64,000 bases of DNA from NCBI GenBank assembly GCA_965644295.1, contig CBFFRP010000284.1, positions 62,001 through 126,000 on the forward strand. The letters are read 5' to 3'. The position numbers and the translations under genes are program-made. A model generated the notes under the pieces. That model worked only from the letters and a program-made list of their open reading frames with translations, made no database searches and was not told where the DNA came from. The DNA is from Paraphysomonas bandaiensis. Its lineage: Eukaryota > Protista > Chrysophyceae. Numbering within the stretch: the first letter of the stretch is position 1; each line of letters starts with the position of its first letter. This document shows positions 27,731 through 63,476 of this stretch, one piece after another.

Positions 27731-29011
27731 TTATCTATACGCCCTCCAAATAATCCAATTCAGTACATCAATTTGTCCTTTTACTTCTGCAGTAGCAATA
27801 CAAGCACGTTCATTCCATGGACATGGAGGGTCCTGTGAAAGGAGCCACTTCAGTACATCCAACTGGCCATAAGCAGCAGCAGCTTTGCAAGTGAATTCAC
27901 CCCATGGACATGGCGGGTCCTGTGAACGAAGCCAATGCAGAACGTCCAAATGGCCAGCACCAGCAGCACCTGTGGAAGTGCTCCCACCCCATGGACATGG
28001 AGGGTCCTGTGAACGAAGCCACTTCAGTACATCCAACTGGCCATTAGCAGCAGCAGCTTTGCAAGTGAATTCACCCCATGGACATGGCGGGTCCTGTGAA
28101 CGAAGCCATTTCAGAATATCCAAATGGCCAGCACCAGCAGCACCTGTGGAAGTGCTCCCACCCCATGGACATGGAGGGTCCTGTGAACGAAGCCACTTCA
28201 GTACATCCAACTGGCCATATGCAGCAGCACGGCAAACGTCTTTATTCCATGGGCACGGAGGGTCGTGTGAACGAAGCCATTTCAGAATATCCAATTGTCC
28301 ACAAACAGCAGCACTTTCACAAGTCGTACTATCCCATGGACATGGCGGGTCCTGTAAACGAAGCCACTTCAGCACATTCAAATGTCCATCAGCAGCCTCA
28401 CTACACGTGAGTTCATCCCATGGACATGGAGGGTCCTGTGAACGAAGCCACTTCAGTACATCCAAATGGCCAGCACCAGCAGCACTCTGACAAGTCATAC
28501 TATCCCATGGACATGGAGGGTTTTGTGAACGAAGCCACTTCAGCACATCTAAGTGTCCATCAGCAGCAGCAGCAGCAGAAGTGTGTTCATCCCATGGACA
28601 TGGAGGGTCGTGTGAACGAAGCCATTTCAGAACATCTAAATGTCCACGACAAGCAGCAGAAAAGCAAGTGTCGTCAGTCAATAAATATAAGTGCATTGGG
28701 TACACCATAAGTGGAGGTGTGTATATGAGGCTCATGATGTATTTCATCTGCTGTAGTCTGCCGTATTCTGCACATGTATTTATGAGCTCAGTATGTGGGC
28801 AGCCCATAGACAGAGCCCATGAGACCATTGAGTTGGTCATACAATAGTGAGATGCATCTGACTCTACTCTCCTCGTATCAGTCATAGCGTGAAATCTCTT
28901 ACAAGTCAACATCACTGGAAGGATAGCTGCGTGTGGGATCATAGAGATGATGAGACGAATCACATCATCATTAAGAACAGATATATTCGACATATATGAA
29001 CACTGATTCAT
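27731..29011 (-). CDS. Intronless F-box-like plus ankyrin-like 'GHLDVLKWLRSQDPPCPW' repeat protein
   Basis: N-terminal LNDDVIRLII...VMLTCKRF (F-box-like); 10 tandem 28-29 aa repeats. Confidence 0.85.
   Translation of the reverse strand: MNQCSYMSNISVLNDDVIRLIISMIPHAAILPVMLTCKRFHAMTDTRRVESDASHYCMTNSMVSWALSMGCPHTELINTCAEYGRLQQMKYIMSLIYTPPLMVYPMHLYLLTDDTCFSAACRGHLDVLKWLRSHDPPCPWDEHTSAAAAADGHLDVLKWLRSQNPPCPWDSMTCQSAAGAGHLDVLKWLRSQDPPCPWDELTCSEAADGHLNVLKWLRLQDPPCPWDSTTCESAAVCGQLDILKWLRSHDPPCPWNKDVCRAAAYGQLDVLKWLRSQDPPCPWGGSTSTGAAGAGHLDILKWLRSQDPPCPWGEFTCKAAAANGQLDVLKWLRSQDPPCPWGGSTSTGAAGAGHLDVLHWLRSQDPPCPWGEFTCKAAAAYGQLDVLKWLLSQDPPCPWNERACIATAEVKGQIDVLNWIIWRAYR
27812..28650. repeat. 84/87-bp coding tandem repeat array
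   Basis: Recurrent CCATGGACATGG(A/C)GGGTCCTGTGAACGAAGCCA; a near-exact 174-bp two-unit duplication (27887 vs 28061). Confidence 0.95.
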
Positions 29012-30428: not shown

Positions 30429-31541
30429 GCACGAGCCATGTTCTGAGAGGTTGTAGCCGTAGAAAGCGATGGGTGAGACGAAGTTGTCTGCTGAGGGGAT
30501 AGCACATAGGTGCGGTCAGCGCTGCATTGGTGCAGGCACGTGGTTTAACTGAAGTAGTTGAGTAGGGTGAAGGTTGCAAGGCCAGGCAGGGGGGCTTGGA
30601 GCGTGTACAACATGGTGTGACAGGTAATTTGTCAGAAGCGTGGTGGTCAACAAAATGCAGCAGTAAGGGAGTGTAAAAGGCCCTGGGCACACTGATGTGA
30701 CTCAGCCACAGTCTCAATAGAGACATTGGGCTTGGAGCTGGTTAATAGAGTGAAACTTTATGTTGGACTGTATTTGCCATCGTAGGGCAGAGATTACTGT
30801 ACGTATATATATATGCACACACATATGCATATATACACCCTCTCAATATACGTATATATGTACACATACATATTCATATATATATAATGCCAATACCTAC
30901 GGCACATCTCATTGCTGGTATATCTGTTGCTGTGTATGAAGTGTAACATATATTCATATCAGGGCTATCGTTTGCACTCGTGTCTGTCTTGGGTCCCCTC
31001 TCTATTGCATATATCTCCGCTCCACACCTACACTCTCTCTCCCGGCGGGTGCGGGTATCATACCAGCAAGGGGCAATTGGGTGTGAGTGTACTCCTCTCT
31101 ACAGTCTTTTTTTAATGATATATATATAATGATGTGGCAACAAGAACTCGTAACAAACTATTTGTTACAAGGTGTGCACCAGTTGCATTAGCTGTGTTGC
31201 TAGAGTTGATTTTATTTGTTGAAGTGGTTATATATTAGTTTTTATCATCATGCTTTGTATTCGTTGTAATAATTGTATTCGCTATGGTGATATTATTCGT
31301 TTGTGTATATTTGTTGCATGAAGTATGTTATAGTAGGCACATGACTGTACTGGATGCATCTAGTATTGGTTATATAATATATATTATATTATTACCTCTA
31401 CTACTGTACTACGTTAATAGTTATATTTTTGTTGTTGATGTGATATTATTTGTTTTTTATGCTGATTAAATTAGTTGCCACACACAGAGCTTCACTTCTG
31501 TATGAATACAGTATATGCTTACAACAACGATTAATGAGTTA
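30429..31541. repeat. 1113-bp direct duplication of 35890-37002 (5' part of a family E C/D element plus ~750 bp adjacent DNA)
   Basis: Identical ORF translations at an offset of 5461 bp; ends located by eye. Confidence 0.9.
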
Positions 31542-32230
31542 TACACCGAGACGTAAATACACGTATCAAGGGAATTGTCAAAAGGCCGAGGCTGGGAATA
31601 TGCTTAAAAGCTCGAACCAAACAGAGGCCTCTGGTTACGCTATGTTTTCGTGCAATGGACTCACAACATTATTTGCAGCAATGCACAAGCAATCCCGAGA
31701 CAACTGAGCATTTTGTAATCTGTGTTGTTACCACTAGTCTAGAGTAATAGATAGATAAATGCAATAAGTTCTCTCATGTAATAATCAGATCTTATTATAT
31801 ATGGACTCACAACATGGTAAAACATTAGCATATTTGTAATGTGAAATTAGAATACTGTGAAATTTCTCACTCTTTTCTTTCACACAGTGCTGTGGCTTGA
31901 TTTTGACCTTCCACATGTTGCCGATGTGTGTTTACTCTCTATTACCACCAGCAGCAGTCTCCCAACCATCTTGCCAGCTCTGGCGGTATTTTTGGTGGCA
32001 GGGCCAACGTATTTGTTTATCTGAGGTAGTACTGAGTTAACGTCTCTAGGAGTGAATCTATGCGTTTATCAATCTCAGAGATATTTGGTTCGAAAATGAT
32101 AAGTAATAACGCGACTCATTATCCTGCATCCGATTTGTAGAACAAACGTAATAAATATGTACATAACTTCGTATGGTCTTTGAAACAAGGGTAGAGTGTG
32201 GAAGTGCTGATGGTTTCGTATAATATAGTA

Positions 32231-33940
32231 TATATTGAATGTCTGATTATTTAGCAATAGGCGTTGAAAGCCTGCACCAATTAGTGGCTAGAAGAATGCT
32301 AGTCATACTAGTTAGACTACTACCCGTAACTAATCAATACAAACTCTTTTATCCTACTATTTAACGCTACAGAAGCTGCTTGTGCGTCGCCGCAAGCACC
32401 AAGGTGCAACCACTTCCGTTCTTAGTGTGTGTTATGAGGCTCGCCATGATCGTGTGTCCTGGGACTCACCGGCGCGTGTGATCTGGAGGTCTCCTCTTGG
32501 GATGAGACTCCACTCGCTATATGATAGATAGCCTTATGTACCTCACGGGGACTGACTTATTAGCCTTATGGCAGTTAGGGGAAACAGTAATATGCCCTTC
32601 TGAGATTGGCGATCTGGTGGCCTTCCTTTAGGCATTGTTCCAAGTGGCTCGGAGGTATGTGGATGAAGGTCTTGCAAAAGGTTATGGCCTACTGTGAAGA
32701 AGCGTCGAAATCGGCTCTTTTGCTGTCTTAGCCAGCGGTAGAGAACACATGCAAGAGGGTGTATAGCTGTACAGGGGTGGGATGTGAGGGTCATCCGGTG
32801 TGTCCAGCTACAGGGAGTCGAGAGGGAGTGTGATGGTGCAAGAGAGGCAACATCTGATTGAGGAGAGTGAGACTGCGCAACAGAACAAGAGTCACTGAGG
32901 TCGAGTACTCTGATAGACCTATGCACGAGATGATCGTGATGATGATGATGGTCTGGAGGAGACACTCGGACGTCCTCAGCTGCCCTTGTTAGTGTCTGTG
33001 TTGGTGCAGGGGGGTACAGGCTGAGGCATAGAGAGTGTGTGTAAGGAAGATGACGGCAAGGTATCAGAGACGAAGGGAGAGGCGATAGTTTGTCTGGGGG
33101 TTTTCTAGGAGGAGGCAGAGTGTACTGTGTGTGTGTATGACAGTGCAGCGGTGCTATGAGTGTGTTGGACAGAGAGAGAGAGCTGGTGATGTGTCCAACA
33201 GTACAGGTAGACAGGTACATGGACATGGTGATGTGTCCAACAGTACCGGTATACAGGTACATGGACATGGTGATGTGTCCAACAGCAGTAGAGGTATACA
33301 CGGAATGGTATACATCCTGTAGGACACAGTAGTACAGTAGTCGAGTATACCGTATGCGGAATACAGTGTCTATCCAATGAGATGGATGGGCTGTGGGGGT
33401 GATAGGTGAACAGGGTGAGGGGGTAGCCTGCTGGGTGGATGGACCACAGACAAACCATGTTGGGTTGGGCTGGGTTGTCGTCAGGAGACGGCCCTGTTGC
33501 ACAGTGGAGAGGTGTCGAGAGGAGACAGGGGTTGCAGAGAAGGTACATGGGGGCCGTTTGCGTGGACCTGCTCGCACGAGCCATGCTGTAAGTGGTTGTA
33601 TCCGTAGAGAACCGTGTAGGAGACGAAGGTGTCTCCTTAGGTGATAGCATATGCATGCGGTCAGCGCTGCATTGGTGCAGGCACGTTGTTTAACTGAAGT
33701 AGTTGAGTAGGGTGAAGGTTGCAAGGCCAGGCAGGGGGGCTTGGAGCGTGTACAACATGGTGTGACAGGTAATTTGTCGGAAGCGTGGTGGTCAACAAAA
33801 TGCAGCAGTAAGGGAGTGTAAAAGGCCCTGGGCACACTGATGTGACTCAGCCACGGTCTCAATAGAGACATTGGGCTTGGAGCTGGTTAATAGGGTGAAA
33901 CTTTATGTTGGACTGTATTTGCCATCGTAGGGCAGAGAAT
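32231..33940 (-). mobile_element. Family E copy C (1.7 kb, carries a 442-aa ORF, no RT)
   Basis: 12-bp TSD TATAATATAGTA at 32219-32230 and 33941-33952; tail ATATA; shared 3' module. Confidence 0.9.
32543..33871 (-). CDS. Element-borne ORF, H/T/P/C-rich, with (R/K)PPD motifs; function unknown
   Basis: 442 codons, also open in copy D; no RT or endonuclease motifs recognised. Confidence 0.4.
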   Translation of the reverse strand: MSLLRPWLSHISVPRAFYTPLLLHFVDHHASDKLPVTPCCTRSKPPCLALQPSPYSTTSVKQRACTNAALTACICYHLRRHLRLLHGSLRIQPLTAWLVRAGPRKRPPCTFSATPVSSRHLSTVQQGRLLTTTQPNPTWFVCGPSTQQATPSPCSPITPTAHPSHWIDTVFRIRYTRLLYYCVLQDVYHSVYTSTAVGHITMSMYLYTGTVGHITMSMYLSTCTVGHITSSLSLSNTLIAPLHCHTHTQYTLPPPRKPPDKLSPLPSSLIPCRHLPYTHSLCLSLYPPAPTQTLTRAAEDVRVSPPDHHHHHDHLVHRSIRVLDLSDSCSVAQSHSPQSDVASLAPSHSLSTPCSWTHRMTLTSHPCTAIHPLACVLYRWLRQQKSRFRRFFTVGHNLLQDLHPHTSEPLGTMPKGRPPDRQSQKGILLFPLTAIRLISQSP

Positions 33941-34394
33941 TATAATATAGTAACTGAACATAATAATATGTATGATACTCAATTAAAATCAAAATTGGGA
34001 TAATTATTTCTCATCCTTTATATTGGTGTACTTGTCGCTGCTACCAACCAATATTTAACAATCTTAAATGTTATATAGACATCTTCTTATGCAGTCAATG
34101 TATTTCAGTATATCTAACCTTTAATCATGTAATTTATTTCATTAAGTTCATACAATACGACATCGTTAAGTCTTTAACTACTGCACTCTTCAATAAAACG
34201 AGGACCCCTTCGGGGTTTGAAGGAACATGATCACCTTCTTCTCTACTTGATTTTTAATTGACGATTATAACTCAAAAATCTCACAAAAAAGAAAACTCAA
34301 CATGACGAACGCTTTGCATGCATCCCAATCGTGTGATCAATGCTGTCTACATCAGTGCTTACGCTGCCACTGGAGATGTTGTAGATACTTATTC

Positions 34395-34484
34395 GCCTTC
34401 TTAGGCGTAGTGCCACGTGGCTCGGAGGTATGTGGATGAAGGCCTTGCAACAGTTTTTCGGAATGATCGGTTCTTTTGCTGTCT
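34395..34484 (-). mobile_element. Old degenerate internal fragment of family E C/D type
   Basis: GTGGCTCGGAGGTATGTGGATGAAGG...TCTTTTGCTGTCT matches 32644-32727 with an internal deletion. Confidence 0.7.
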
Positions 34485-34505
34485 GTCTCTAGTAGCCTGG
34501 CTTTT

Positions 34506-36254
34506 ATATTGAATGTCTGATTATTTAGCAATAGGCGTTGAAAGCGTGCACCAATTAGTGGCTAGAAGAATGCTAGTCATACTAGTTAGACTACTACCCG
34601 TAACTAATCAATACAAACTCTTTTATCCTACTATTTAACGCTACAGAAGCTGCTTGTGCGTCGCCGCAAGCACCAAGGTGCAACCACTTCCGTTCTTAGT
34701 GTGTGTTATGAGGCTCGCCATGATCGTGTGTCCTGGGACTCACCGGCGCGTGTGATCTGGAGGTCTCCTCTTGGGATGAGACTCCACTCGCTATATGATA
34801 GATAGCCTTATGTACCTCACGGGGACTGACTTATTAGCCTTATGGCAGTTAGGGGAAACAGTAATATGCCCTTCTGAGATTGGCGATCTGGTGGCCTTCC
34901 TTTAGGCATTGTTCCAAGTGGCTCGGAGGTATGTGGATGAAGGTCTTGCAAAAGGTTATGGCCTACTGTGAAGAAGCGTCGAAATCGGCTCTTTTGCTGT
35001 CTTAGCCAGCGGTAGAGAACACATGCAAGAGGGTGTATAGCTGTACAGGGGTGGGATGTGAGGGTCATCCGGTGTGTCCAGCTACAGGGAGTCGAGAGGG
35101 AGTGTGATGGTGCAAGAGAGGCAACATCTGATTGAGGGGAGTGAGACTGCGCAACAGAACAAGAGTCACTGAGGTCGAGTACTCTGATAGCCCTATGCAC
35201 GAGATGATCGTGATGATGATGATGGTCTGGAGGAGACACTCGGACGTCCTCAGCTGCCCTTGTTAGTGTCTGTGTTGGTGCAGGGGGGTACAGGCTGAGG
35301 CATAGAGTATGTGTGTAAGGAAGATGACGGCAAGGTATCAGAGACGAAGGGAGAGGAGATAGTTTGTCCGGGGGTTTTCTAGGAGGAGGTAGAGTGTACT
35401 GTGTGTGTGTATGACACTGCAGTGGTGTTATGAGTGTGTTGGACAGAGAGAGAGAGCTGGTGATGTGTCCAGCAGTACAGGTAGACAGGTACATGGACAT
35501 GGTGATGTGTCCAACAGTACAGGTATACAGGTACATGGACATGGTGATGTGTCCAACAGTACAGGTATACAGGTACATGGACATGGTGATGTGTCCAACA
35601 GCAGTAGAGGTATACACGGAATGGTATACATCCTGTAGGACACAGTAGTACAGTAGTCGAGTATACCGTATGCGGAATACAGTGTCTATCCAATGAGATG
35701 GATGGGCTGTGGGGGTGATAGGTGAACAGGGTGAGGGGGTAGCCTGCTGGGTGGATGGACCACAGACAAACCATGTTGGGTTGGGTTGAGTGGGCGGCAG
35801 AAGGCAGCCCTGTTGCACAGTTGAGAGGGATCGAGAGTATTCAGTGATTGCATAGGGGGTCCATGGGGGTCGTTTTCGTGAGCCTGCTCGCACGAGCCAT
35901 GTTCTGAGAGGTTGTAGCCGTAGAAAGCGATGGGTGAGACGAAGTTGTCTGCTGAGGGGATAGCACATAGGTGCGGTCAGCGCTGCATTGGTGCAGGCAC
36001 GTGGTTTAACTGAAGTAGTTGAGTAGGGTGAAGGTTGCAAGGCCAGGCAGGGGGGCTTGGAGCGTGTACAACATGGTGTGACAGGTAATTTGTCAGAAGC
36101 GTGGTGGTCAACAAAATGCAGCAGTAAGGGAGTGTAAAAGGCCCTGGGCACACTGATGTGACTCAGCCACAGTCTCAATAGAGACATTGGGCTTGGAGCT
36201 GGTTAATAGAGTGAAACTTTATGTTGGACTGTATTTGCCATCGTAGGGCAGAGA
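34506..36254 (-). mobile_element. Family E copy D (same ends as C, one extra 42-bp repeat, no TSD found)
   Basis: Near-identical to 32231-33938 apart from one divergent block and the repeat number; ORF 34817-36187 (456 aa). Confidence 0.88.
35458..35605. repeat. 42-bp minisatellite (TVGHITMSMYLYTC units); one unit fewer at 33184-33290
   Basis: TGGTGATGTGTCCAACAGTACAGGTATACAGGTACATGGACA repeated ~3.5 times. Confidence 0.9.
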
Positions 36255-37002
36255 TTACTGTACGTATATATATATGCACACACATATGCATATATACACC
36301 CTCTCAATATACGTATATATGTACACATACATATTCATATATATATAATGCCAATACCTACGGCACATCTCATTGCTGGTATATCTGTTGCTGTGTATGA
36401 AGTGTAACATATATTCATATCAGGGCTATCGTTTGCACTCGTGTCTGTCTTGGGTCCCCTCTCTATTGCATATATCTCCGCTCCACACCTACACTCTCTC
36501 TCCCGGCGGGTGCGGGTATCATACCAGCAAGGGGCAATTGGGTGTGAGTGTACTCCTCTCTACAGTCTTTTTTTAATGATATATATATAATGATGTGGCA
36601 ACAAGAACTCGTAACAAACTATTTGTTACAAGGTGTGCACCAGTTGCATTAGCTGTGTTGCTAGAGTTGATTTTATTTGTTGAAGTGGTTATATATTAGT
36701 TTTTATCATCATGCTTTGTATTCGTTGTAATAATTGTATTCGCTATGGTGATATTATTCGTTTGTGTATATTTGTTGCATGAAGTATGTTATAGTAGGCA
36801 CATGACTGTACTGGATGCATCTAGTATTGGTTATATAATATATATTATATTATTACCTCTACTACTGTACTACGTTAATAGTTATATTTTTGTTGTTGAT
36901 GTGATATTATTTGTTTTTTATGCTGATTAAATTAGTTGCCACACACAGAGCTTCACTTCTGTATGAATACAGTATATGCTTACAACAACGATTAATGAGT
37001 TA

Positions 37003-37192
37003 GTAGTGAATGTCTGATTATTTAGCAATAGGCGTTGAGACCTTGCATCAATTAGTGGCTAGAAGAATGCTAGTCATACTAGTTAGACCACTACCCGTAA
37101 CTAATCAATACAAACTCTTTTATCCTACTATTTAACGCTACGAAAGCTGCTTGTGCGTCGCCGCAAGCACCAAGGTGCAACCACTTCCGTTC
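37003..37192 (-). mobile_element. Family E copy F: 3' module only, fused to a copia fragment
   Basis: Interrupts the duplicated flank at GAGTTA (compare 31541); similarity stops at the base of the 3' stem, where copia integrase sequence starts. Confidence 0.85.
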
Positions 37193-38987
37193 AGGAGCAC
37201 GTACTTATACCCTTGTCTGGATTCACAATTGAGATAGACGGAGATGTCCGCTGTTACTCTTTCCAGGAACCTGACTGCGCTTAGCTCTTCGTTGTCCCGT
37301 GATTTGAACGAATGCCTGGTTATCTTCGCCTTGGCACACCATTTACACAGGGGTTTCTTGCAACTCTTCTCCTTTGCCTTCGAAAGGTGATGTCGTTGTA
37401 GTCCTGATCCTCTGAATAACATGTGTCGGTGAGCTTCTATTAACTTCGATTTCGAGACATGTCCAGTACGCTCATGTAAGCGATCCAACGCATCTTGTCC
37501 TGTATTATCCGACAAATTTACCTCCTCCATCTGATTGCACATAGACACATTTGGCAGATTTAACACCTCCATCAAGTCCACATACGGCATTCCTCCATGC
37601 TCATCGTACTCTCCAGTCAACACCTCGTTTCCAGAGTCCAATTCCACGATTTTAGGCTTTCGAAGCAGTTGTAATCCGTATCCCATTGATCTCAGCATTC
37701 CTCCTGACACAATGTTCTTCACCGCTTCTTCACTAACTCTGATGTCTCTCCATTCCCCGAATGTACCAGTTCCCTGTGTCTCCAATTGAGAACCCTTTCT
37801 AGTTAGTTGGATTGCCCCAAACTCAGGAGTAAATGACTCCAGTGCAATTTTATCCTTTACTATAAACAGTCTTTTACTTGCACAACTGTCCAGATATACA
37901 CGAGGTTCTTCCGACGTATCCACCGATAGCAAAACCTCTTCTCCAAACATATTCGCTTCATCATCCGACGACTCTCCGTCGTTGACGTATTTCTTCCATT
38001 CTGTCTCGAATTTCCTGTTCGATTTTCGAGGATTCTCATTATCCGGGTTTTTTATGTTCTTCCGTTTTTTCGACTTGCACTGTCGGGCTTTATGACTAAA
38101 ATCTCCACAGATATGACAACCAGTATAATCCTTTGATCCTGGCTGCTGCACACTCTTCGAAGCCTTTTCCTTTGTCTTCCCTTTTCTTTTGAACTTGTCC
38201 ATTTTTCTTTGTCGTTCCTTAGCATAACAATTCGCTGCTACATGTCCCTTCTTCCGACAAAATGAACAAACCACTGGCTCCTTCGACGCCGTAAAATTGA
38301 TCTCTTCAGATTTGTCTCCCTTTAGTTTCTTCAGCTGCGTCATAGCCTCGTCATACTCTTCACAAGCCTCTTTCACCGAATCAAATGTAGTTGTTGCTTT
38401 AGGCATCATCGCTACCGACATCCATAAATCATGTAATTCCTCTATCTGCAGCGCTGCTTTTATCTTTGCTAATTTACTTGCCTCTGTCTGCGGTTGTCCC
38501 AATTTTATGAGCTTCTGGATTATACCGTTCAGTCGATCTACCCCAACAGACACCTTTTCCCCCGGCCTTATTTTGAACGAATGGTATTCTGCCGTAGTCT
38601 TCTCCAATACAGTCCCAATCTCGCCTCTGAACCTATCAACCAGTGTCTGAAGGAGCTCACTGGATAACACCTCCTTAGCAGGATCATCAGCAGGTAAAAT
38701 TGCCTTCCCCTCCAAATATTGATTGGCTACCTCCAACACATCAGGGTCATGCTCGCAAGCCTCCCAAATAGTACTAACACAGGTATCATTACGCTCTCTC
38801 CATGACTCTAAATTACTATAGTGTACAAACCACCCACTCAGTGATCGTATCCTGTATAGTCATCCACTTCTACTTCAGTTTCATACTACATAATATAATG
38901 TACTAATTACATATATATCTTTCGATCCTTGCATCTCACATAATACTGCACTCAATTGCAAGTATATAGAATCTTCAGATCTCAACA
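37193..38987 (-). pseudogene. Truncated, internally deleted copy of the copia element (partial 5' LTR, gag, protease, integrase N-terminus)
   Basis: Near-identical to 48629-50250 and 50526-50698; a ~275-bp deletion at ~38814 removes U5, the ATG and the PBS; RT/RNase H absent. Confidence 0.92.
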
Positions 38988-43864: not shown

Positions 43865-45404
43865 TATGAGGACACCCGCACACTTGATTTACTACAGTTA
43901 ATTATCTACTCAGCCTCTGCTTCATGGAGGCGATTTATATATGTGCTAATAGTGTGGAGTGAGAGCGCTGCAGTGACCTCATCTAATAAGAGTGTTGTCA
44001 TAGTGGGCACTGCCACACAAAGACTTCCAGATGCGACTATTGGATGTCGCATACCATACATACCATACTACTCCTGGTACTGCTGCTCTGTATACTATAC
44101 ATTGTATACCGTATACACGCACAATACCCTCATTCAGTCGAAAAATATCCTTATTTCTGGAATATATAGAGCATAAAACCAGGATTTTGTTTTTCATTTG
44201 AGGCTGCGGATGTGATGTACATGTATAGGACACGTATGCATGATCAAAGATGGATTGCTTTACTTATGGTGTGTTGGTATATTTCGAGTAGCGTTAGCTA
44301 TCTTCTGAGAATTTCATCGACGATCAAACTCGTGATAAGCAAGATACGCTCCACGTGATGTCAGTGTCCATTCTTCTTTACCGTCCTCCAACAAATATAC
44401 TCTGGCTTATACTCTCAATCTAATTGAATCAATTAGAAAGTTTCTCTGGCGTAGATGCTACCTGCCCTATAATAAAACTTGGACTCAAACCTATACGCGA
44501 GTTTGTAGGTATAAGTGCCGGAGAGACTCCCTTTGTGAAAGTCACATGAGCCGCTGTTTGTAGGCAGCACGACCTTGTTTTTACGGGTTCTATTTCCTAC
44601 TACTCACAGCCAAATGTATATGTGGTGCAAGGAGCATTGGCATGCATTTTCTGTGTAAACATGAAAAATAAACAGGGGTCCATGCTATGGTCAACTCGAT
44701 GTTTTGGGCTGTCTGCAGAAGTTAAGTATCCGGGATTAGTTCACCATGATGACTCGAAAATCAGTTGATTTTAAAATTAAAAAATTCTGTTGCTCATTAC
44801 ATCTGCATTGAGTAATTGATGTTAATGTAAGTTCACTACATTCAATATTTGTGTGGGACATTCAATATTTGTGTGGGCAATGACTGATGAAATGGGTGGA
44901 ATAGCAACTGCCAACAGCGACGTGGTTACACGTGCTTTCGCATATCACACACTACGGCCTAGTCTTGTTTACTGTTATGCTCTACCACTGTTATTTAAGC
45001 ACTGTCAGATACATTTGTGCTTTATTTTTTTTTCTTGGTTAGCAAGTGTTTTCATTTTTATGGCTGAAAGAGCGCGGTTTCCAATTGCATTATATCACTA
45101 AATACTTAATACTGCTTCAGCGTAGTAGGCTGGTAACTACATAACTACTTTACGCTGGACACACTTCAACTGTGTATTCTAAAGGAAGCCTTTAGTTGGC
45201 AATATAACACAAGCCGCAATAATCATAGCTAGTGCTTGTGTGGTAAAACAATAGGGTATTTGTCAGCTGTCTACTTTTCGGGTGTAGTGAAAGTCTGATT
45301 ATTAGCAATAGGCGTGTAAGAGTCAGAACTAATATACTAAACAAATTTAACTAACTAGTGTTTATCACTAATATCCTACTATTTGGCGCTACAAAAGCTG
45401 CTTG

Positions 45405-45697
45405 TAACAGAAGTTGACATTATTTGCTAAGGTTTACTATTCTCAACTGATAAGATGAAATTATAAACATTACATGATAAAGAACCTAAGTTGTGTTCGA
45501 TGTGTTCAACACCATTCATTTACTACTATAGTGTACAAACCACCCACTCAGTGATCGTATCCTGTATAGTCATCCACTTCTACTTCAGTTTCATACTACA
45601 TAATATAATGTACTAATTACATATATATCTTTCGATCCTTGCATCTCACATAATACTGCACTCAATTGCAAGTATATAGAATCTTCAGATCTCAACA
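45405..45697 (-). repeat. 3' LTR (sense TGTTGAG...CTGTTA)
   Basis: Identical by eye to 50406-50698. Confidence 0.95.
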
Positions 45698-45708
45698 CTC
45701 CCCCTCAA
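45698..45708 (-). other. Polypurine tract
   Basis: Sense TTGAGGGGGAG immediately before the 3' LTR. Confidence 0.9.
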
Positions 45709-45822
45709 TTGAGTGTTGTACTTATGACGCCTCCCAGCTATTGAATGCCTGAGATAAAAAAATTCTTGACAGTAAAATAGACTCATCTCTAAGTCTAAAC
45801 CTCTGTCTAAAAAACTCAGTAC

Positions 45823-48800
45823 CTACTTGCGCCTTCTTTTATCCCTTGGTCCCTCATTAATCACTTCAGTGGAACTCTTAACTTTCTCTCCAAGATTTCT
45901 CTTTCTCTGCTCCATATATGATAAACCAACCAATGACTTTGTATAAATATCTGCTGCTTGTTGCGATGTATGCACATGCACTAACTTAATCGTATTGAAC
46001 TGATTGGGATCCACGTGCTCTCTCACCATGTGATACTTAATCTCAATGTGCTTCGACTTCTTGTGAAACACTGGGTTTTCGGCCAAATCCTGGGCACTCT
46101 GACTGTCGATGAAGAATGGTGTGGGTTTGATGAGCCTCAACTTAATCTCACCCGTCACCCCCCGAACCCATAGCACTTCTTGGAGACCCGAGTAAATACA
46201 CTGATACTCAGACTGCATGCTTGACGTTGCCACTGTCGTCTGCAGTTTGGACTGCCAGACTATAGGCCCTCCCGCTGCAAACCCAACGTACCCCGACGTG
46301 GACTTCCTGGAGAGCTGATCTCCCGCCCAATCCGCGTCAGTAAACATATGGAAGTCGAACCGTCTACTCCCATATTGAATCCCTTTGTCAATAGAACCAC
46401 GAATATATTGCCATACATGTGTTAATAGCTTGCATACTTCAATATTCACCTTATTACTGAACCGAGACAGTACTCCCACTGCATAGGCAATATCCGGCCT
46501 CGTGTTCATCGATAGATATAGTAATGCACCTATCAGCGGCCGATATGGGAAGTTATCTACTATAAGCTGTTCCTCCTCGGTATGCTCATGCCGCGCCCCT
46601 TTTGCCACTAAATCCATTGCTTCCGCCGGTAGAGGACTCTTCCGTACCTTTCGCGGTGACCCAAGATACTTTTCAAACTTTTCTAAGATCTTAGCCGCAT
46701 ATACTGATTGGTCAAGACGAATATACTCTGGCGTTCTTGTGACTCGAACATTCAGAAAATGTTCCATCTCGCCCATATCCTTCATATCAAACCGGGCACA
46801 CAGTTGAGCTTTAATATCCTTCACTATGTTGACATCACGACCTAACACTAGGATATCATCCACATATATCGTTAATAATATCAATTCATCGCCCTTATAC
46901 TGATAATACAAACACGGGTCTAATACACATGGTTTAAAATGCATAGATCGTATGAATTTATCCAATGTTTTCCACCACGACCGCGGGGAACTCCGAAGCC
47001 CGTATAACGACTTCTTCAGCTTAAAGCAGTACCCCTCAGGCAGCTGAAAGTCCGGAGTTGCCTTCATATATACGTCCCCCTCTATATCTGCATATAGAAA
47101 TGCGTTAGACACATCCAGTTGATGAATTACCATGTTCATCACGAAAGCTATGGCGATTAACAGTCGCACTGTTACCCCCTTAACAACGGGTGCGAAATGG
47201 TTCGCCCAACCACTCGACTGCTGTCCACAACCGATTGCTACAAGACGAGCCTTATATCGGCGGACCTCTCCCTCCTTATCGTACTTCTTTCCATAGACGT
47301 ACTTGGAGTGCAGTGGGACGACTCCGTCCGGTATACGAGTCACCTCCATGGTATCTCGCTTCGCCAAACCCTCTCGCTCTACACGGCGAGCTCGTCTCCA
47401 CTCCCTGTGCTCGGCACTCTCCAAGGACTCACGATGTGTCTGAGGCACTGTCGACTCTTCCGCTGACATCCACACTGAGTCTGCCTCCTGTAAAAGGTCA
47501 CTCACATCACTCTCATCACTCAAATGATGGATTTGTCCTAACACCGACACATTCGTTACCGTCCTTGGAGTTCTTGCGCGTTTGCCGTGCGGATGATTCT
47601 CGGCAGGGGTCCCTTCCCCCGAAGGTAATGCTGAGTCAGCCTGGGGCTGCACCTGCCCACTTTCCGACTGCTGTGGCACCACTCCGCTGATACCGCCGTC
47701 ACGGTTGTCAGTAACTCTGGCCCTAACCACCCTCTGCGCAAGATCCTCTGTCATCTTCTTGATGTCAGCAATATGAATAGGAGTTTTATCCTCCACTTGA
47801 ACCTGGTTACCAGTAACCAACGACCGGTATCCCACAATAAGTCCCTTCCTTATCACCACTCTGTTAGTCTTGTATAGCAGACCACCATCCTCATGGTGCT
47901 TTCCGATAAGATACTCAAACTCACCCGGTTGACGAGCCTCGGGATCTATAGCCACTTGAGCCTCCTCCAGCTCTCTATAATAATCCTGAGACCTCTCAGG
48001 TACCGATTCATCAAATAATACATGTACAGAGTGTACTACGGTGTCCCCCACTAGCACCTTGTATCCTTTTCGATCAGCTGGATACCCTATGAAATAACCT
48101 GTCATTGCTTTGTCCTCCCAGTCCTTCCTCCTGTCGGCCTTGGGTGTTAGCACATATGCTTTGCACCCCCATTTCCGTAGCCACGATAGGCTGGGAACGC
48201 TCCCCCCTGGGACACACTCATATGGAGACATCCATCCTTGCCACGTCCGAGTTGGCATTCGTCGCACAATGTAACATGCAGTTTGATAAGCATCAAACCA
48301 GAACGACTTTGGAAGTCCAGATGCCGTCAACATCGTCAGTGTCATCTCCCCAATTGTTCGGAATTTCCTCTCAGACACCGCGTTGAGCTCTGGCGTGTCT
48401 CGTGTTGTATGTGACACCCGAGTCCCATATCGCTGCAACAGATACTCTCTTATCTGCTGACTAATAAGTTCGGATCCTCCATCGGCATGATACTCCACTA
48501 TACGGTTCCACCCCTCGTACTTCACTAAGTGGACCTCGCACAAGTGTCGTAGACATTTGAACACCTCCTCTCCGCTTCGAGTCCTCAATCCATATTCCCA
48601 TATCATCTTTGTTGCTAAGTCCGTAAATAGGAGCACGTACTTATACCCTTGTCTGGATTCACAATTGAGATAGACGGAGATGTCCGCTGTTACTCTTTCC
48701 AGGAACCTGACTGCGCTTAGCTCTTCGTTGTCCCGTGATTTGAACGAATGCCTGGTTATCTTCGCCTTGGCACACCATTTACACAGGGGTTTCTTGCAAC

Positions 48801-50421
48801 TCTTCTCCTTTGCCTTCGAAAGGTGATGTCGTTGTAGTCCTGATCCTCTGAATAACATGTGTCGGTGAGCTTCTATTAACTTCGATTTCGAGACATGTCC
48901 AGTACGCTCATGTAAGCGATCCAACGCATCTTGTCCTGTATTATCCGACAAATTTACCTCCTCCATCTGATTGCACATAGACACATTTGGCAGATTTAAC
49001 ACCTCCATCAAGTCCACATACGGCATTCCTCCATGCTCATCGTACTCTCCAGTCAACACCTCGTTTCCAGAGTCCAATTCCACGATTTTAGGCTTTCGAA
49101 GCAGTTGTAATCCGTATCCCATTGATCTCAGCATTCCTCCTGACACAATGTTCTTCACCGCTTCTTCACTAACTCTGATGTCTCTCCATTCCCCGAATGT
49201 ACCAGTTCCCTGTGTCTCCAATTGAGAACCCTTTCTAGTTAGTTGGATTGCCCCAAACTCAGGAGTAAATGACTCCAGTGCAATTTTATCCTTTACTATA
49301 AACAGTCTTTTACTTGCACAACTGTCCAGATATACACGAGGTTCTTCCGACGTATCCACCGATAGCAAAACCTCTTCTCCAAACATATTCGCTTCATCAT
49401 CCGACGACTCTCCGTCGTTGACGTATTTCTTCCATTCTGTCTCGAATTTCCTGTTCGATTTTCGAGGATTCTCATTATCCGGGTTTTTTATGTTCTTCCG
49501 TTTTTTCGACTTGCACTGTCGGGCTTTATGACTAAAATCTCCACAGATATGACAACCAGTATAATCCTTTGATCCTGGCTGCTGCACACTCTTCGAAGCC
49601 TTTTCCTTTGTCTTCCCTTTTCTTTTGAACTTATCCATTTTTCTTTGTCGTTCCTTAGCATAACAATTCGCTGCTACATGTCCCTTCTTCCGACAAAATG
49701 AACAAACCACTGGCTCCTTCGACGCCGTAAAATTGATCTCTTCAGATTTGTCTCCCTTTAGTTTCTTCAGCTGCGTCATAGCCTCGTCATACTCTTCACA
49801 AGCCTCTTTCACCGAATCAAATGTAGTTGTTGCTTTAGGCATCATCGCTACCGACATCCATAAATCATGTAATTCCTCTATCTGCAGCGCTGCTTTTATC
49901 TTTGCTAATTTACTTGCCTCTGTCTGCGGTTGTCCCAATTTTATGAGCTTCTGGATTATACCGTTCAGTCGATCTACCCCAACAGACACCTTTTCCCCCG
50001 GCCTTATTTTGAACGAATGGTATTCTGCCGTAGTCTTCTCCAATACAGTCCCAATCTCGCCTCTGAACCTATCAACCAGTGTCTGAAGGAGCTCACTGGA
50101 TAACACCTCCTTAGCAGGATCATCAGCAGGTAAAATTGCCTTCCCCTCCAAATATTGATTGGCTACCTCCAACACATCAGGGTCATGCTCGCAAGCCTCC
50201 CAAATAGTACTAACACAGGTATCATTACGCTCTCTCCATGACTCTAAATTCCTTCCTCCGGCTGGCGGGTCCTCCAAGCCAAGATGGTTTCGGTTTTTCT
50301 TCATTAGATGCATCTTGATTTTTCTCGCTGAATAGTCTGCTTGGTTCTTGTCAAACCGTAGCTTCTTGTCATCTTCCCCATCCCTACAACTAGCATTCGC
50401 TACCATAACAGAAGTTGACAT
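45823..50421 (-). CDS. Copia Gag-Pol polyprotein (1532 aa)
   Basis: Two CCHC knuckles, protease LDSCAS, HHCC plus DDE integrase, RKGY, RT QLDV...IYVDD, RNase H DADWAG...KHIEIKYH; order PR-IN-RT-RH. Confidence 0.98.
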   Translation of the reverse strand: MSTSVMVANASCRDGEDDKKLRFDKNQADYSARKIKMHLMKKNRNHLGLEDPPAGGRNLESWRERNDTCVSTIWEACEHDPDVLEVANQYLEGKAILPADDPAKEVLSSELLQTLVDRFRGEIGTVLEKTTAEYHSFKIRPGEKVSVGVDRLNGIIQKLIKLGQPQTEASKLAKIKAALQIEELHDLWMSVAMMPKATTTFDSVKEACEEYDEAMTQLKKLKGDKSEEINFTASKEPVVCSFCRKKGHVAANCYAKERQRKMDKFKRKGKTKEKASKSVQQPGSKDYTGCHICGDFSHKARQCKSKKRKNIKNPDNENPRKSNRKFETEWKKYVNDGESSDDEANMFGEEVLLSVDTSEEPRVYLDSCASKRLFIVKDKIALESFTPEFGAIQLTRKGSQLETQGTGTFGEWRDIRVSEEAVKNIVSGGMLRSMGYGLQLLRKPKIVELDSGNEVLTGEYDEHGGMPYVDLMEVLNLPNVSMCNQMEEVNLSDNTGQDALDRLHERTGHVSKSKLIEAHRHMLFRGSGLQRHHLSKAKEKSCKKPLCKWCAKAKITRHSFKSRDNEELSAVRFLERVTADISVYLNCESRQGYKYVLLFTDLATKMIWEYGLRTRSGEEVFKCLRHLCEVHLVKYEGWNRIVEYHADGGSELISQQIREYLLQRYGTRVSHTTRDTPELNAVSERKFRTIGEMTLTMLTASGLPKSFWFDAYQTACYIVRRMPTRTWQGWMSPYECVPGGSVPSLSWLRKWGCKAYVLTPKADRRKDWEDKAMTGYFIGYPADRKGYKVLVGDTVVHSVHVLFDESVPERSQDYYRELEEAQVAIDPEARQPGEFEYLIGKHHEDGGLLYKTNRVVIRKGLIVGYRSLVTGNQVQVEDKTPIHIADIKKMTEDLAQRVVRARVTDNRDGGISGVVPQQSESGQVQPQADSALPSGEGTPAENHPHGKRARTPRTVTNVSVLGQIHHLSDESDVSDLLQEADSVWMSAEESTVPQTHRESLESAEHREWRRARRVEREGLAKRDTMEVTRIPDGVVPLHSKYVYGKKYDKEGEVRRYKARLVAIGCGQQSSGWANHFAPVVKGVTVRLLIAIAFVMNMVIHQLDVSNAFLYADIEGDVYMKATPDFQLPEGYCFKLKKSLYGLRSSPRSWWKTLDKFIRSMHFKPCVLDPCLYYQYKGDELILLTIYVDDILVLGRDVNIVKDIKAQLCARFDMKDMGEMEHFLNVRVTRTPEYIRLDQSVYAAKILEKFEKYLGSPRKVRKSPLPAEAMDLVAKGARHEHTEEEQLIVDNFPYRPLIGALLYLSMNTRPDIAYAVGVLSRFSNKVNIEVCKLLTHVWQYIRGSIDKGIQYGSRRFDFHMFTDADWAGDQLSRKSTSGYVGFAAGGPIVWQSKLQTTVATSSMQSEYQCIYSGLQEVLWVRGVTGEIKLRLIKPTPFFIDSQSAQDLAENPVFHKKSKHIEIKYHMVREHVDPNQFNTIKLVHVHTSQQAADIYTKSLVGLSYMEQRKRNLGEKVKSSTEVINEGPRDKRRRK
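50394..50405 (-). other. Primer-binding site (probably initiator tRNA-Met)
   Basis: Sense TGGTAGCGAATG directly after the 5' LTR; complementary to a ...GCUACCA tRNA end, implying an A1:U72 pair. Confidence 0.75.
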
Positions 50422-50698
50422 TATTTGCTAAGGTTTACTATTCTCAACTGATAAGATGAAATTATAAACATTACATGATAAAGAACCTAAGTTGTGTTCG
50501 ATGTGTTCAACACCATTCATTTACTACTATAGTGTACAAACCACCCACTCAGTGATCGTATCCTGTATAGTCATCCACTTCTACTTCAGTTTCATACTAC
50601 ATAATATAATGTACTAATTACATATATATCTTTCGATCCTTGCATCTCACATAATACTGCACTCAATTGCAAGTATATAGAATCTTCAGATCTCAACA
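50406..50698 (-). repeat. 5' LTR (contains the gag ATG at 50421)
   Basis: Identical to the 3' LTR. Confidence 0.95.
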
Positions 50699-50956
50699 GC
50701 TTGTGCGTCACCGCAAGCACCAAGGTGCTATCACTTTCGCTTTATGTCCTCGAGGTGAACTAGCCCGGATGCTTGACTTTAGTATTAGGCAGCCCAATAC
50801 CCTGGTAACCCTAGAGGTGGGGCCATTTCCGGATGCATGTTTATTCGTCAAGGCCCAATGACGTCTACACAAGTGACACTTGTATATTAGTGTCCCGTGT
50901 ACCACACAAGCATTTGGCTGTGAGTGGGCAGAACAATATCTTCTGACTATATATGC

Positions 50957-51044
50957 GACTCACGTTACTTTCCTGAAAAAATCTCTCCGGTACTTACCCC
51001 TCGAAACACCACGAAAAGGTGTAAGTCCGACTTTGTTGAGGGAC
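50957..51044 (-). ncRNA. HDV-ribozyme-like nested double pseudoknot at the 5' end of copy G
   Basis: P1 GTCCCTC/GAGGGGT, P2 GACTTAC/GTGAGTC, P3 ACC/GGT, L3 TTTTCGT, P1.1 TT/AA, P4 hairpin; no catalytic C in J4/2. Confidence 0.45.
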
Positions 51045-51261
51045 TTTCGGGTGGCTTACCGGGAAAACGTTAATCCTAAGAGCTGAAACTATCTAGATCT
51101 AGGTCTATTACCATTAAACTTCATATATATTTATTTAACGTTCTTCGTAGCAGTGTAGCACATACAAGGAAGAATAGAATCGATATATTGCTATTACCTA
51201 ACACACCTACTGTTACTGTTTCTACTAACCCTCCATGAACATCATACATTTATTATCTACA

Positions 51262-60923: not shown

Positions 60924-61072
60924 GAAGTGAATGTCTGATTATTAGCAATAGGCGTGCAAGAGTCTGAACTAATGTAGTACAACTATTTAACTAACTAGTG
61001 CTATTTATTTATTTAACGCTACGAAAGCTGTTTGTGCGTCACCGCAAACACCAAGGTGCAACCACTTTCGCT
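60924..61072 (-). mobile_element. Family E copy H1: 3' module only (G-like subtype)
   Basis: TGAATGTCTGATTATTAGCAATAGGCG at 60928; similarity ends at the base of the 3' stem. Confidence 0.85.
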
Positions 61073-61143
61073 CTATCGCCCTCAACAAAGTCGGACTCAC
61101 ACCTTTTCGTGGTGTTCTGGGGGATAAGCACCGGAGAGATTCT

Positions 61144-63476
<2,333 letters not shown>

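What the first reader, a model, noticed from the sequence alone, without database searches (positions are those of the whole stretch)
50957..51044. Variant HDV-like ribozyme fold at the 5' end of the short subfamily
Seen (sense, copy G): GTCCCTC-AACAAAGTCG-GACTTAC-ACC-TTTTCGT-GGT-GTTTC-GAGGGGT-AA-GTA-[CCGGAGAGATTTTTTCAGG]-AAAGTAAC-GTGAGTC. This gives a 7-bp P1 opening with G.U, then P2, a 3-bp P3, a 7-nt L3 ending UCGU, P1.1 and P4, in HDV order. Copy H2 (61079-61165) keeps most pairings with changed bases (GACTCAC/GTGAGCC, 8-bp P4 CCGGAGAG/CTCTCTGG). The fold starts at the insertion boundary. Established: R2 and other non-LTR elements, and R2 SIDEs, use HDV-like ribozymes to make their 5' end. 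Oddities: P1.1 is UU/AA rather than CC/GG; 5 extra nt lie between P3 and P1 (GTT can pair with AAC); J4/2 reads GTAAC or TTAAC with no catalytic C. It is therefore either a dead or structural relic or a new variant. Caveat: the first GT could belong to a slipped TSD.
Basis: partly seen in the sequence, partly recalled or inferred. Interest (0 to 1): 0.8.

Follow-up and report, generated by a model that had tools for sequence, protein, structure and literature searches.

The report
Trypanosome-type HDV-like ribozyme head, diatom retroposon
The first ~87 bases of a roughly 500-base retroposon found in hundreds of copies in this stramenopile (probably diatom) genome fold like the HDV-like ribozyme/promoter "Pr77" head so far described only in trypanosome retroposons, but the two copies in this window have lost the candidate catalytic cytosine and are probably dead.

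Summary
The quoted sequence is there (copy G 51044-50957, minus strand; H2 61079-61165), but its first two bases (GT) are target-site duplication. The element starts at CCCTCAAC.

Copy G is an old, ~85%-identical copy split by a copia element. The family has more than 490 heads in the genome.

G carries G and H2 carries T at that position.

The head shares ordered blocks with the trypanosomatid Pr77/L1TcRz hallmark, an experimentally active HDV-like ribozyme and promoter:
- CCCT at the 5' end
- ACC-U..UCGU-GGU
- AGUACC
- GGGAA.CUAA

A metagenome scan found further relatives. Across these lineages P1, P1.1, P2, P3 and P4 covary: 87% of cells are paired against 64% in shuffles (0/500) and 35-46% with partners slid.

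Points against: there is no Rfam HDV hit, Pr77-only models do not reach significance, and all copies carry a 3-nt insertion between P3 and P1. Self-cleavage is untested.

The host is a stramenopile, not a kinetoplastid, and I found no report of this head there. The scan's first readers noted the same family elsewhere in this genome.

The parts
50954..51042 (-). Head of copy G (element nt 1-88): P1 51042-51036, P2 5' strand about 51028-51021, P3/L3/P3' 51020-51008, GTT linker and P1' 51007-50998, P4 50990-50972. J4/2 carries G instead of the family's C at 50968. P2' is 50963-50957.
   Evidence: It is 78/90 identical to the family consensus. The position equivalent to C76 reads G (sequence read directly).
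51043..51054 (-). 5' target-site duplication of copy G (CCACCCGAAAGT).
   Evidence: It matches ACACCCGAAAAGT directly after the element's 3' end.
50699..50953 (-). Body of copy G, up to the point where an LTR retrotransposon interrupts it.
   Evidence: query positions 58-402 match 40 genomic copies at 82-86%.
45405..50698 (-). Ty1/copia LTR retrotransposon inserted into copy G. It has identical 293-bp LTRs (45405-45697 and 50406-50698) and a 1532-aa ORF. It is not part of the retroposon.
   Evidence: LTRs 100% identical; RVT_2, rve and SH3_retrovirus domains.
45286..45404 (-). 3' tail of copy G, ending ...CAGACTTTCA(CT). The 3' target-site duplication follows at about 45273-45285.
61079..61167 (+). 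Head of copy H2, 87/90 identical to the consensus. The J4/2 position C76 reads T at 61154.
61168..61664 (+). Body and tail of H2, a diverged subfamily with an extra internal segment. It ends GACTTTCAAT at 61655-61664. Bases 61144-62265 are tandemly duplicated at 62262-63383.
44466..44560 (+). Old, roughly 70%-identical head-like copy (CCTATAAT...). It has no close relatives in the genome.

Best explanation
The first ~87 nt of this retroposon family are a Pr77/L1TcRz-type HDV-like ribozyme module.

The element. It is about 490 bp and non-coding. It starts at CCCTCAAC, ends at GACTTTCAAT, and is flanked by 11-14-bp target-site duplications. Its 3' ~190 nt are shared with an APE+RT LINE of the same genome, which presumably copies it by target-primed reverse transcription (inferred).

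The fold, in consensus numbering:
- P1: C1-A6 with U40-G45, plus the A7/C39 mismatch
- P2: G15-C22 with G81-C87
- P3: A23-C25 with G33-U35
- L3: U26-U32 (UUUUCGU)
- a 3-nt linker, G36-U38
- P1.1: U28 with A46
- J1/4: UAAGUA
- P4: C53-G60 with C64-G71
- J4/2: GAAAC76UAAC

Proposed mechanism (inferred by analogy with L1TcRz and R2). When a copy is transcribed through from upstream, the RNA folds into this double pseudoknot and C76 catalyses cleavage just 5' of C1. This releases a unit-length RNA that still carries the whole head, so every new copy inherits it. As in Pr77, the same DNA may also act as an internal Pol II promoter, because CGTG lies at +30 to +33.

The two copies in the window carry G or T at C76, and G has further decay, so they are inactive descendants.

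Shown here: the element boundaries, the copy number, the conserved core, and covariation of all helices across lineages. Not shown: cleavage, promoter activity, and mobilisation by the LINE.
For: Exact 5' end. Flanks diverge immediately upstream of CCCTC and the TSDs abut it. Loose ends at L003:1501/1502 in contigs of two further organism labels (X3, X12) mark the same boundary.

Abundance. 492 and 613 exact pattern matches in the genome, against 0 and 14 for the controls.

C76. It is C in 99 of 100 listed copies and in all eight other rows of A4, that is every row except copies G and H2.

Similarity to Pr77 heads taken from the supplement of PMC4035085. The summed global alignment score has z = 3.9, with 0 of 5000 dinucleotide shuffles as high; LmSIDER2A alone has z = 5.4.

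Conserved positions. Eighteen columns are invariant across the 10 sequences, including the first U of L3, the CG of L3, GG of P3', GGAA and AA of J4/2. They correspond to HDV U20, C24/G25 and A77/A78; that equivalence rests on my own knowledge of the HDV numbering.

Metagenomic relatives. They have unrelated bodies but the same core.

Covariation on a MAFFT alignment made without reference to structure. For P2+P3+P1.1+P4, 87.1% of cells are paired, against 64.3+-2.8 in shuffles (0/500) and 35-46% with partners slid. There are 44 double-sided changes against 17.3+-3.1. P1.1 reads U:A x5, A:U x4, U.G x1.

P1. In register, 88.6% of cells are paired against 30-59% when slid, with C:G<->G:C at position 5.

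Own versus swapped partner duplex energies. Only 2 of 720 permutations for P2, and 4 of 720 for P1, do as well as the true pairing.

Conservation across subfamilies. The head is more conserved than the body in 7 of 8 diverged copies.

Transcription. Parts of the element occur in contigs of poly-A marine metatranscriptome runs. That tool notes presence in such a run does not prove transcription.

Precedent. L1TcRz and several other Pr77 heads cleave in vitro at +1 (PMC3185411, PMC4035085).
Against: - No Rfam HDV-like family matches, even at E<=10 on 141 nt of a consensus-like head.
- An HMM built from five Pr77 heads finds nothing. A covariance model of the same five gives only 6.7 bits, E = 8.9, on one head.
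- All copies carry 3 extra nt between P3' and P1'. Only 5 matches have canonical spacing, and all are deletion derivatives or chance. As far as I know no characterised HDV-like ribozyme has such a linker.
- P1 is 6 bp plus an A/C mismatch in most copies. There is no G1.U wobble. P1.1 is a single U:A pair.
- The nested MFE is no better than shuffles.
- Within this genome P1, P2 and P3 never vary between subfamilies, so there is no internal covariation.
- In the young subfamily the head is no more conserved than the body: 97.3% for both.
- The LINE that shares the 3' tail has no such head.
- Some natural Pr77 variants are catalytically inactive (PMC4035085).
- The metagenomic relatives were found with a pattern taken from our own head, so their conserved blocks are not independent evidence. 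Their helices are.
Confidence: 0.6

Rival explanations
1. The head is a conserved, structured 5' module without catalysis in this lineage. It would be an internal Pol II promoter (initiation at +1, with a DPE-like CGTG at +30 to +33) and/or a structure that stabilises the RNA or recruits protein. It would descend from, or converge on, the Pr77 fold, with the 3-nt insertion having abolished cleavage.
For: - In Pr77, CGTG at +25 to +28 is an essential downstream promoter element (PMC4748587). Here CGTG sits at +30 to +33, inside the most conserved block.
- A dispersed element with hundreds of copies and no target specificity needs its own promoter.
- Every copy has the non-canonical P3-P1 linker and a weak P1.1.
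- Rfam and the Pr77 models do not recognise it.
- Several natural Pr77 variants do not cleave (PMC4035085).
Against: - A DNA promoter alone does not explain compensatory changes in P1, P2, P4 and P1.1 across lineages.
- It does not explain the conserved C-N-A-A or the U..CG of L3, which are the catalytic-core positions of HDV-type ribozymes.
- Promoter and ribozyme functions coexist in L1Tc (PMC3383444), so this rival excludes only the catalysis.
Confidence: 0.3
2. A chance fold. The 5' end is simply the start of a repeat, and the HDV order of helices is read into it.
For: - 1.7% of shuffles pass a relaxed descriptor.
- The MFE z-score is -0.23.
- There is no Rfam hit.
- There is no within-genome covariation.
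Against: - Cross-lineage covariation, with 0 of 500 shuffles as high and clear separation from the slid controls.
- Similarity to Pr77, with 0 of 5000 shuffles as high.
- The same core heads unrelated bodies in other organisms.
Confidence: 0.04
3. A classical SINE head derived from a Pol III-transcribed small RNA (tRNA, 5S, 7SL or snRNA).
For: The element is short, non-coding, high in copy number and shares its 3' tail with a LINE.
Against: - No small-RNA family matches the head, even at E<=10.
- I see no A-box or B-box in the sequence (read directly; not searched with a tool).
- A T4 run at nt 26-29 and a T5 run in the tail would terminate Pol III. That inference rests on established knowledge of Pol III termination.
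Confidence: 0.03

Closest known systems
L1TcRz / Pr77 hallmark of trypanosomatid ingi/L1Tc-clade retroposons (L1Tc, NARTc, ingi, RIME, SIDER, DIRE)
   Same: - It sits at nt +1 of a non-LTR retroposon, including short non-coding derivatives.
- It begins CCCU, so there is no G1.U.
- P3 is 3 bp (ACC/GGU).
- L3 is 7 nt and ends UCGU.
- P1.1 is a single base pair, U:A here and A:U there.
- J1/4 contains AGUAC.
- GGGAA precedes C-N-A-A in J4/2.
- P2' follows directly.
- CGTG lies near +25 to +33.

   Different: - The host is a stramenopile, not a kinetoplastid.
- The head is about 87 nt instead of 77-79.
- There is a 3-nt insertion between P3' and P1'.
- P1 position 5 is C:G instead of G:C.
- L3 reads UUUUCGU, not UCAUCGU.
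- Models built only from Pr77 do not score it significantly.
- The LINE sharing the 3' tail lacks the head.
- Activity is untested.
R2 and other non-LTR HDV-like ribozymes (R2, R4, RTE, LOA, Baggins) and R2-derived SIDEs
   Same: An HDV-type double pseudoknot at the 5' end that defines the element's 5' terminus on co-transcripts. The non-autonomous derivatives keep the head plus the 3' tail (PMC3414825, PMC5786205).
   Different: Those ribozymes keep G1.U, GC-rich P1.1 pairs and direct P3'-P1' continuity, and are recognised by HDV descriptors. R2 is target-specific and lacks a promoter. This element is dispersed, with variable TSDs.
Genomic HDV ribozyme (Rfam RF00094)
   Same: The order of helices; a 3-bp P3; L3 with U...CG; and C-N-R-A in J4/2. 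The comparison rests on my own knowledge of the HDV sequence.
   Different: There is no sequence or covariance-model match. In this head, 4 nt (GAAA) separate P4 from the C, P1.1 is one A-U pair, and there is a P3-P1 linker.

Membership tests
HDV-like self-cleaving ribozymes (general class) | Nested double pseudoknot in the order P1-P2-P3-L3-P3'-P1'-P1.1-P4-J4/2-P2' | tested here: met
   All helices are present in the consensus. They covary across 10 sequences from at least 6 lineages.
HDV-like self-cleaving ribozymes (general class) | 6-7-bp P1 whose 3' strand directly continues from P3' | tested here: not met
   P1 is 6 bp plus an A/C mismatch. Three extra nt (GUU) lie between P3' and P1' in essentially all of the 490+ copies. 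The relatives L081, L082 and Pr77 have direct continuity.
HDV-like self-cleaving ribozymes (general class) | G1.U wobble at the cleavage site | tested here: not met
   The element starts with C1, paired to G45. The same is true of Pr77/L1TcRz, which is active.
HDV-like self-cleaving ribozymes (general class) | Catalytic C in J4/2 (C-N-R-A) | tested here: met
   The consensus reads C76-U-A-A, and 99 of 100 listed copies have C. This is NOT met in the two window copies: G at 50968 and T at 61154.
HDV-like self-cleaving ribozymes (general class) | Recognition by curated covariance models (Rfam HDV, CPEB3, drz families) | tested here: not met
   No hit at the gathering score or at E<=10.
HDV-like self-cleaving ribozymes (general class) | Site-specific self-cleavage 5' of nt 1 | not testable with these tools
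   Only contigs were available for RNA runs, so no 5' ends can be read.
Pr77 hallmark / L1TcRz | Occupies the exact 5' end of a non-LTR retroposon | tested here: met
Pr77 hallmark / L1TcRz | Sequence similarity to the 77-79-nt signature | tested here: inconclusive
   Pairwise global scores give z = 3.9, with 0 of 5000 shuffles as high. nhmmer finds nothing, and the covariance model gives 6.7 bits, E = 8.9.
Pr77 hallmark / L1TcRz | CGTG downstream promoter element at +25 to +28 | tested here: inconclusive
   CGTG is present and invariant, but at +30 to +33 (PMC4748587). Promoter activity cannot be tested here.
Pr77 hallmark / L1TcRz | Carried by ingi/L1Tc-clade LINEs and their derivatives | not tested
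   The LINE sharing the 3' tail (APE+RT) has no head at its 5' end. Its clade was not determined.
Pol III SINE | Head derived from tRNA, 5S, 7SL or snRNA with internal A and B boxes | tested here: not met
   No Rfam small-RNA match. There are T4 and T5 runs inside the element.

The most novel reading that the evidence does not exclude
The Pr77/L1TcRz head is not a trypanosomatid invention. It would be an ancient or horizontally mobile ribozyme-promoter cassette that heads unrelated retroposon bodies in distant eukaryotes: a diatom-like stramenopile, unidentified eukaryotes in metagenomes, and kinetoplastids. In this genome it drives a SINE-like family of hundreds of copies whose LINE partner does not carry it, and a variant with a 3-nt P3-P1 linker is still catalytically competent.
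Probability: 0.35. Interest if true: 0.75.

Novelty: new variant of a known kind. Interest (0 to 1): 0.6.

Why it matters
HDV-like ribozymes at the 5' ends of non-LTR elements are established. The Pr77/L1TcRz type, however, has been treated as a hallmark of trypanosomatid retroposons and linked to their peculiar polycistronic transcription.

A recognisably similar head, with the same helices kept by compensatory changes, in a stramenopile alga and in environmental eukaryotes would mean two things. The module is far older or more mobile than thought, and its dual ribozyme/promoter logic is not tied to kinetoplastid biology.

It would also give marine phytoplankton an abundant family of candidate self-cleaving RNAs: hundreds of copies per genome, also found in contigs of poly-A metatranscriptome runs. 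These could cut host transcripts wherever a copy sits in sense orientation.

The universal 3-nt P3-P1 insertion is a natural test of how much slack the HDV fold tolerates.

I found no paper combining HDV-like ribozymes, or Pr77, with diatoms in the searchable library. That library is incomplete.

Tried and rejected
- Rfam at the gathering score on the window, and at E<=10 on both a 1-kb and a 141-nt stretch, gave no HDV-like or small-RNA family.
- nhmmer with an HMM of five Pr77 heads gave no hit on any head.
- A covariance model of the five Pr77 heads (P1, P3, P4) gave only one head, at 6.7 bits.
- Within-genome covariation is uninformative. The 5' half is essentially invariant, and only P4 shows G:C<->G.U and loop changes.
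- Head versus body conservation in 25 young copies shows no difference: 97.3% each.
- RNA 5' ends could not be read. All runs are kept as contigs, so no starts are visible and contig breaks at the boundary also occur in DNA runs.
- I looked for a head on the LINE partner and found none. Its 5' end at L077:853 is shared by at least 5 copies and consists of tandem ~400-nt monomers.
- I looked for canonical-spacing heads in this genome. There were only 5 matches, all deletion derivatives or chance.
- The inverted 45-nt repeat flanking H2 first suggested a MITE or foldback. I rejected this. It is the 3' module of a separate, antisense, 5'-truncated copy, and the 30 other copies have unrelated upstream flanks.
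- The copy at 44466 has striking P1 changes (CCTATAA/TTGTAGG), but it is a lone, decayed sequence with register shifts, so I did not use it as evidence.
- One metagenome hit (L080) lies inside a bacterial ABC-transporter ORF and was discarded as chance.
As a result the LINE clade and additional 5' ends were not examined.

Full report
**What is at the coordinates.** A search of the window's own genome (62.6 Mb, 669 contigs) with copy G returned 40 scored full-length copies at 82-86% identity, from 2640 first-look candidates.

Aligning 30 of these copies with their flanks shows three things:
- The element begins precisely at CCCTCAACAAAGTCGG.
- It runs for about 490 bp and ends at ...GACTTTCAAT.
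- It is flanked by 11-14-bp target-site duplications.

For copy G they are the end of the duplication CCACCCGAAAGT (51043-51054), which recurs after the element's 3' end at about 45273-45285.

Copy G is split at 50699/45404 by a Ty1/copia retrotransposon with identical 293-bp LTRs. It is only about 85% identical to the family consensus: head 78/90, body 84%. H2 belongs to a diverged subfamily, yet its head is 87/90 identical to the consensus.

**Host.** A myosin ORF in the window has its only 100% match in a JGI record, and its closest relatives (58-62%) are unnamed JGI, ENA and MMETSP records. The nearest named relatives are oomycetes, Ectocarpus, a labyrinthulomycete and Thalassiosira. Runs holding the element are four coded organisms plus marine metagenomes and metatranscriptomes. 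The genome is a stramenopile, most likely a diatom, and not a kinetoplastid. I did not obtain a species name.

**The family consensus.** The head reads CCCTCAACAAAGTCGGACTCGCACCTTTTCGTGGTGTTCTGGGGGATAAGTACCGGAGAGATTCTCTCTGGGAAACTAACGTGAGCC.

Exact-pattern searches of the genome gave these counts:

| Pattern | Matches | Reversed control |
|---|---|---|
| TCGTGG-N13-15-AGTAC-N8-40-GGAANCNAA | 492 | 0 |
| 5' half | 613 | 14 |

With the J4/2 position left free, 99 of the first 100 listed copies read AAACTAAC. Copy G has G there (window 50968) and H2 has T (61154).

**Known-family scans.** Rfam gave no HDV-like or small-RNA match, at the gathering score or at E<=10. The nested MFE is not unusual (z = -0.23). 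The centroid structure picks P1+P3+P4 while RNAalifold picks P2+P3+P4, as expected for a pseudoknot. A relaxed HDV-order descriptor anchored at nt 1 passes in 1.7% of shuffles. The fold alone is weak evidence.

**The link to Pr77.** Earlier first-reader notes on this genome mentioned the trypanosome ingi/L1Tc signature, and I tested that lead. Pr77 heads printed in the supplement of PMC4035085 share ordered blocks with our head:
- CCCT at +1
- (C)ACC-U..UCGU-GGU
- the P1' G-run
- AGUACC
- GGGAA(A/G)C(U/C)AA
- then the P2' strand

Global alignment of our consensus to five Pr77 heads scores z = 3.9 summed, with 0 of 5000 dinucleotide shuffles as high. LmSIDER2A alone scores z = 5.4.

Models built only from those five heads do not recognise ours. 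nhmmer finds nothing, and a covariance model gives 6.7 bits, E = 8.9, on one head, although the alignment is in the expected register. Membership by model is therefore inconclusive.

**Relatives elsewhere.** One metagenome scan with TTCGTGGT-N-AGTACC-N-GGGAANCTAA returned six loci. One lies in a bacterial ORF and is chance. The other five share features not in the pattern (ACCT before it, A-N-N before AGTACC) and sit in AT-rich, non-coding contexts with bodies unrelated to ours.
- L082 has P1 CCCUCAG/CUGGGGG directly after GGU.
- L081 has an 8-bp P2, GGAUGUCU/AGACAUCC.
- Neither has the three nt (GUU) that in our family separate P3' from P1'.

In our genome essentially every copy has that insertion. 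Only 5 matches have canonical spacing, and all are deletion derivatives or chance.

**Covariation.** A MAFFT alignment of four of our heads, L081, L082 and four Pr77 heads was made without structural input. On it, the helices P2, P3, P1.1 and P4 compare with the controls as follows (P2+P3 alone):

| Measure | Observed | Shuffled | Partners slid |
|---|---|---|---|
| Cells paired | 87.1% | 64.3+-2.8% (0/500 as high) | 35-46% |
| Cells changed on both sides | 44 | 17.3+-3.1 | not compared |
| Covariation score | 0.678 | 0.227 | <=0.19 |

The single P1.1 pair is U:A in the stramenopile and metagenome sequences, A:U in the trypanosomatid ones, and U.G in copy G.

MAFFT split P1, so I counted it directly. 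The first 7 nt against the 7 nt before the P1.1 partner are paired in 88.6% of cells, against 30-59% when slid. There are C:G<->G:C changes at position 5 and three or more pair types at positions 6 and 7.

Swapping partners between lineages makes both helices worse. Only 2 of 720 permutations for P2, and 4 of 720 for P1, reach the observed duplex energy.

Caveat: the sequences are few and partly related, and the metagenomic ones were fished with our own conserved blocks. Their helices were not part of the bait.

**Core nucleotides.** Invariant columns across all ten sequences include the first U of L3, the C-G of L3, GG of P3', GGAA before the J4/2 C, and the AA after it. By my knowledge of the genomic HDV ribozyme these correspond to U20, C24-G25 and A77-A78, with C76 in the place of C75. 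The conserved AGUA...GAA pair of strands at the base of P4 resembles a loop-E (bulged-G) motif. That is a recollection, not a test.

**Within-genome signals.**
- P1, P2 and P3 do not vary between subfamilies, so they are uninformative.
- P4 shows loop changes and G:C<->G.U switches.
- In 25 young copies, head and body are equally conserved at 97.3%, as expected for neutral decay after insertion.
- Across diverged copies the head is better kept than the body in 7 of 8.
- Across runs of three other organism labels and a metatranscriptome, only two substitution sites and one indel in the head reach 10%, against at least 34 sites in the remaining 400 nt. That table is truncated.

**Partner LINE.** A LINE with APE and RT domains, one copy also carrying a SET domain in the same open frame, has a 3' UTR homologous to the short element's last ~190 nt, including the terminal GACTTTCA. 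Its 5' end is shared by at least five copies and is made of tandem ~400-nt monomers, with no head. The short element is thus SINE-like: a ribozyme-type head, its own body, and a LINE-derived tail. T4 and T5 runs inside it argue against Pol III transcription.

**Interpretation.** The most likely reading (about 0.6) is that the family head is an L1TcRz/Pr77-type HDV-like module that defines the RNA 5' end by self-cleavage and may double as an internal Pol II promoter. CGTG lies at +30 to +33, compared with +25 to +28 in Pr77 (PMC4748587).

The main rival (about 0.3) is the same structured module without catalysis, because of the universal P3-P1 linker, the weak P1.1 and the lack of model hits. 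The two copies in this window lack C76 and are best called dead relics.

I found no report of HDV-like ribozymes or Pr77 in diatoms in the searchable library. [quoted passage not shown]

Noticed in passing
window 45405-50698 (and 37193-38987): A Ty1/copia LTR retrotransposon with 100%-identical 293-bp LTRs, an intact 1532-aa ORF and a 5-bp duplication (CTTGT) is inserted inside copy G. A second, partial copy 99.9% identical over 1.6 kb lies at 37193-38817. It appears to be a very recent insertion.
   Followed up: partly
L077:843-8279 (G000:C426) and L075:3769-8778: This is the LINE family whose 3' tail the short element shares. One copy has a 2479-codon open frame with a SET/PR domain upstream of APE and RT. 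Its 5' end consists of tandem ~400-nt monomers.
   Followed up: partly
window 61010-61076; L075:9266-9439; L077:640-855: 5'-truncated antisense copies of the retroposon's 3' module abut the 5' ends of H2 and of two LINE copies, head to head. In the two cases read closely (H2 and L075) the antisense copy is cut at nearly the same element position (about nt 300). I have no explanation for this recurrent arrangement; it might reflect a preferred target or a priming artefact.
   Followed up: partly
window 30429-37192: A tandem array of ~2.27-kb units (94-100% identical) lies on a stretch with strong GC skew. Each unit holds a 442-456-aa ORF on the minus strand with no Pfam match, next to a 190-270-bp piece of the retroposon's 3' region.
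   Followed up: no
window 61144-63383: A 1.12-kb tandem duplication (99.9% identical) duplicates most of H2 and its downstream flank.
   Followed up: no
window 27752-28670: Internal tandem repeats (77-85% identical, offsets of about 87-90 nt, with further matches at roughly 174-nt steps) lie inside the 426-aa ORF 27731-29011.
   Followed up: no
L078/L079, L081, L082, L083 (metagenome contigs): Related heads occur in environmental, apparently eukaryotic contigs (GC 34-48%) with unrelated downstream sequence. L078/L079 is a 5'-truncated copy of the L082 family. The source organisms are unknown.
   Followed up: partly
L021:1398-1496 next to L021:1501: Two heads lie in tandem, a partial one directly upstream of a full element. 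This recalls the double Pr77 signatures of SIDER2.
   Followed up: no
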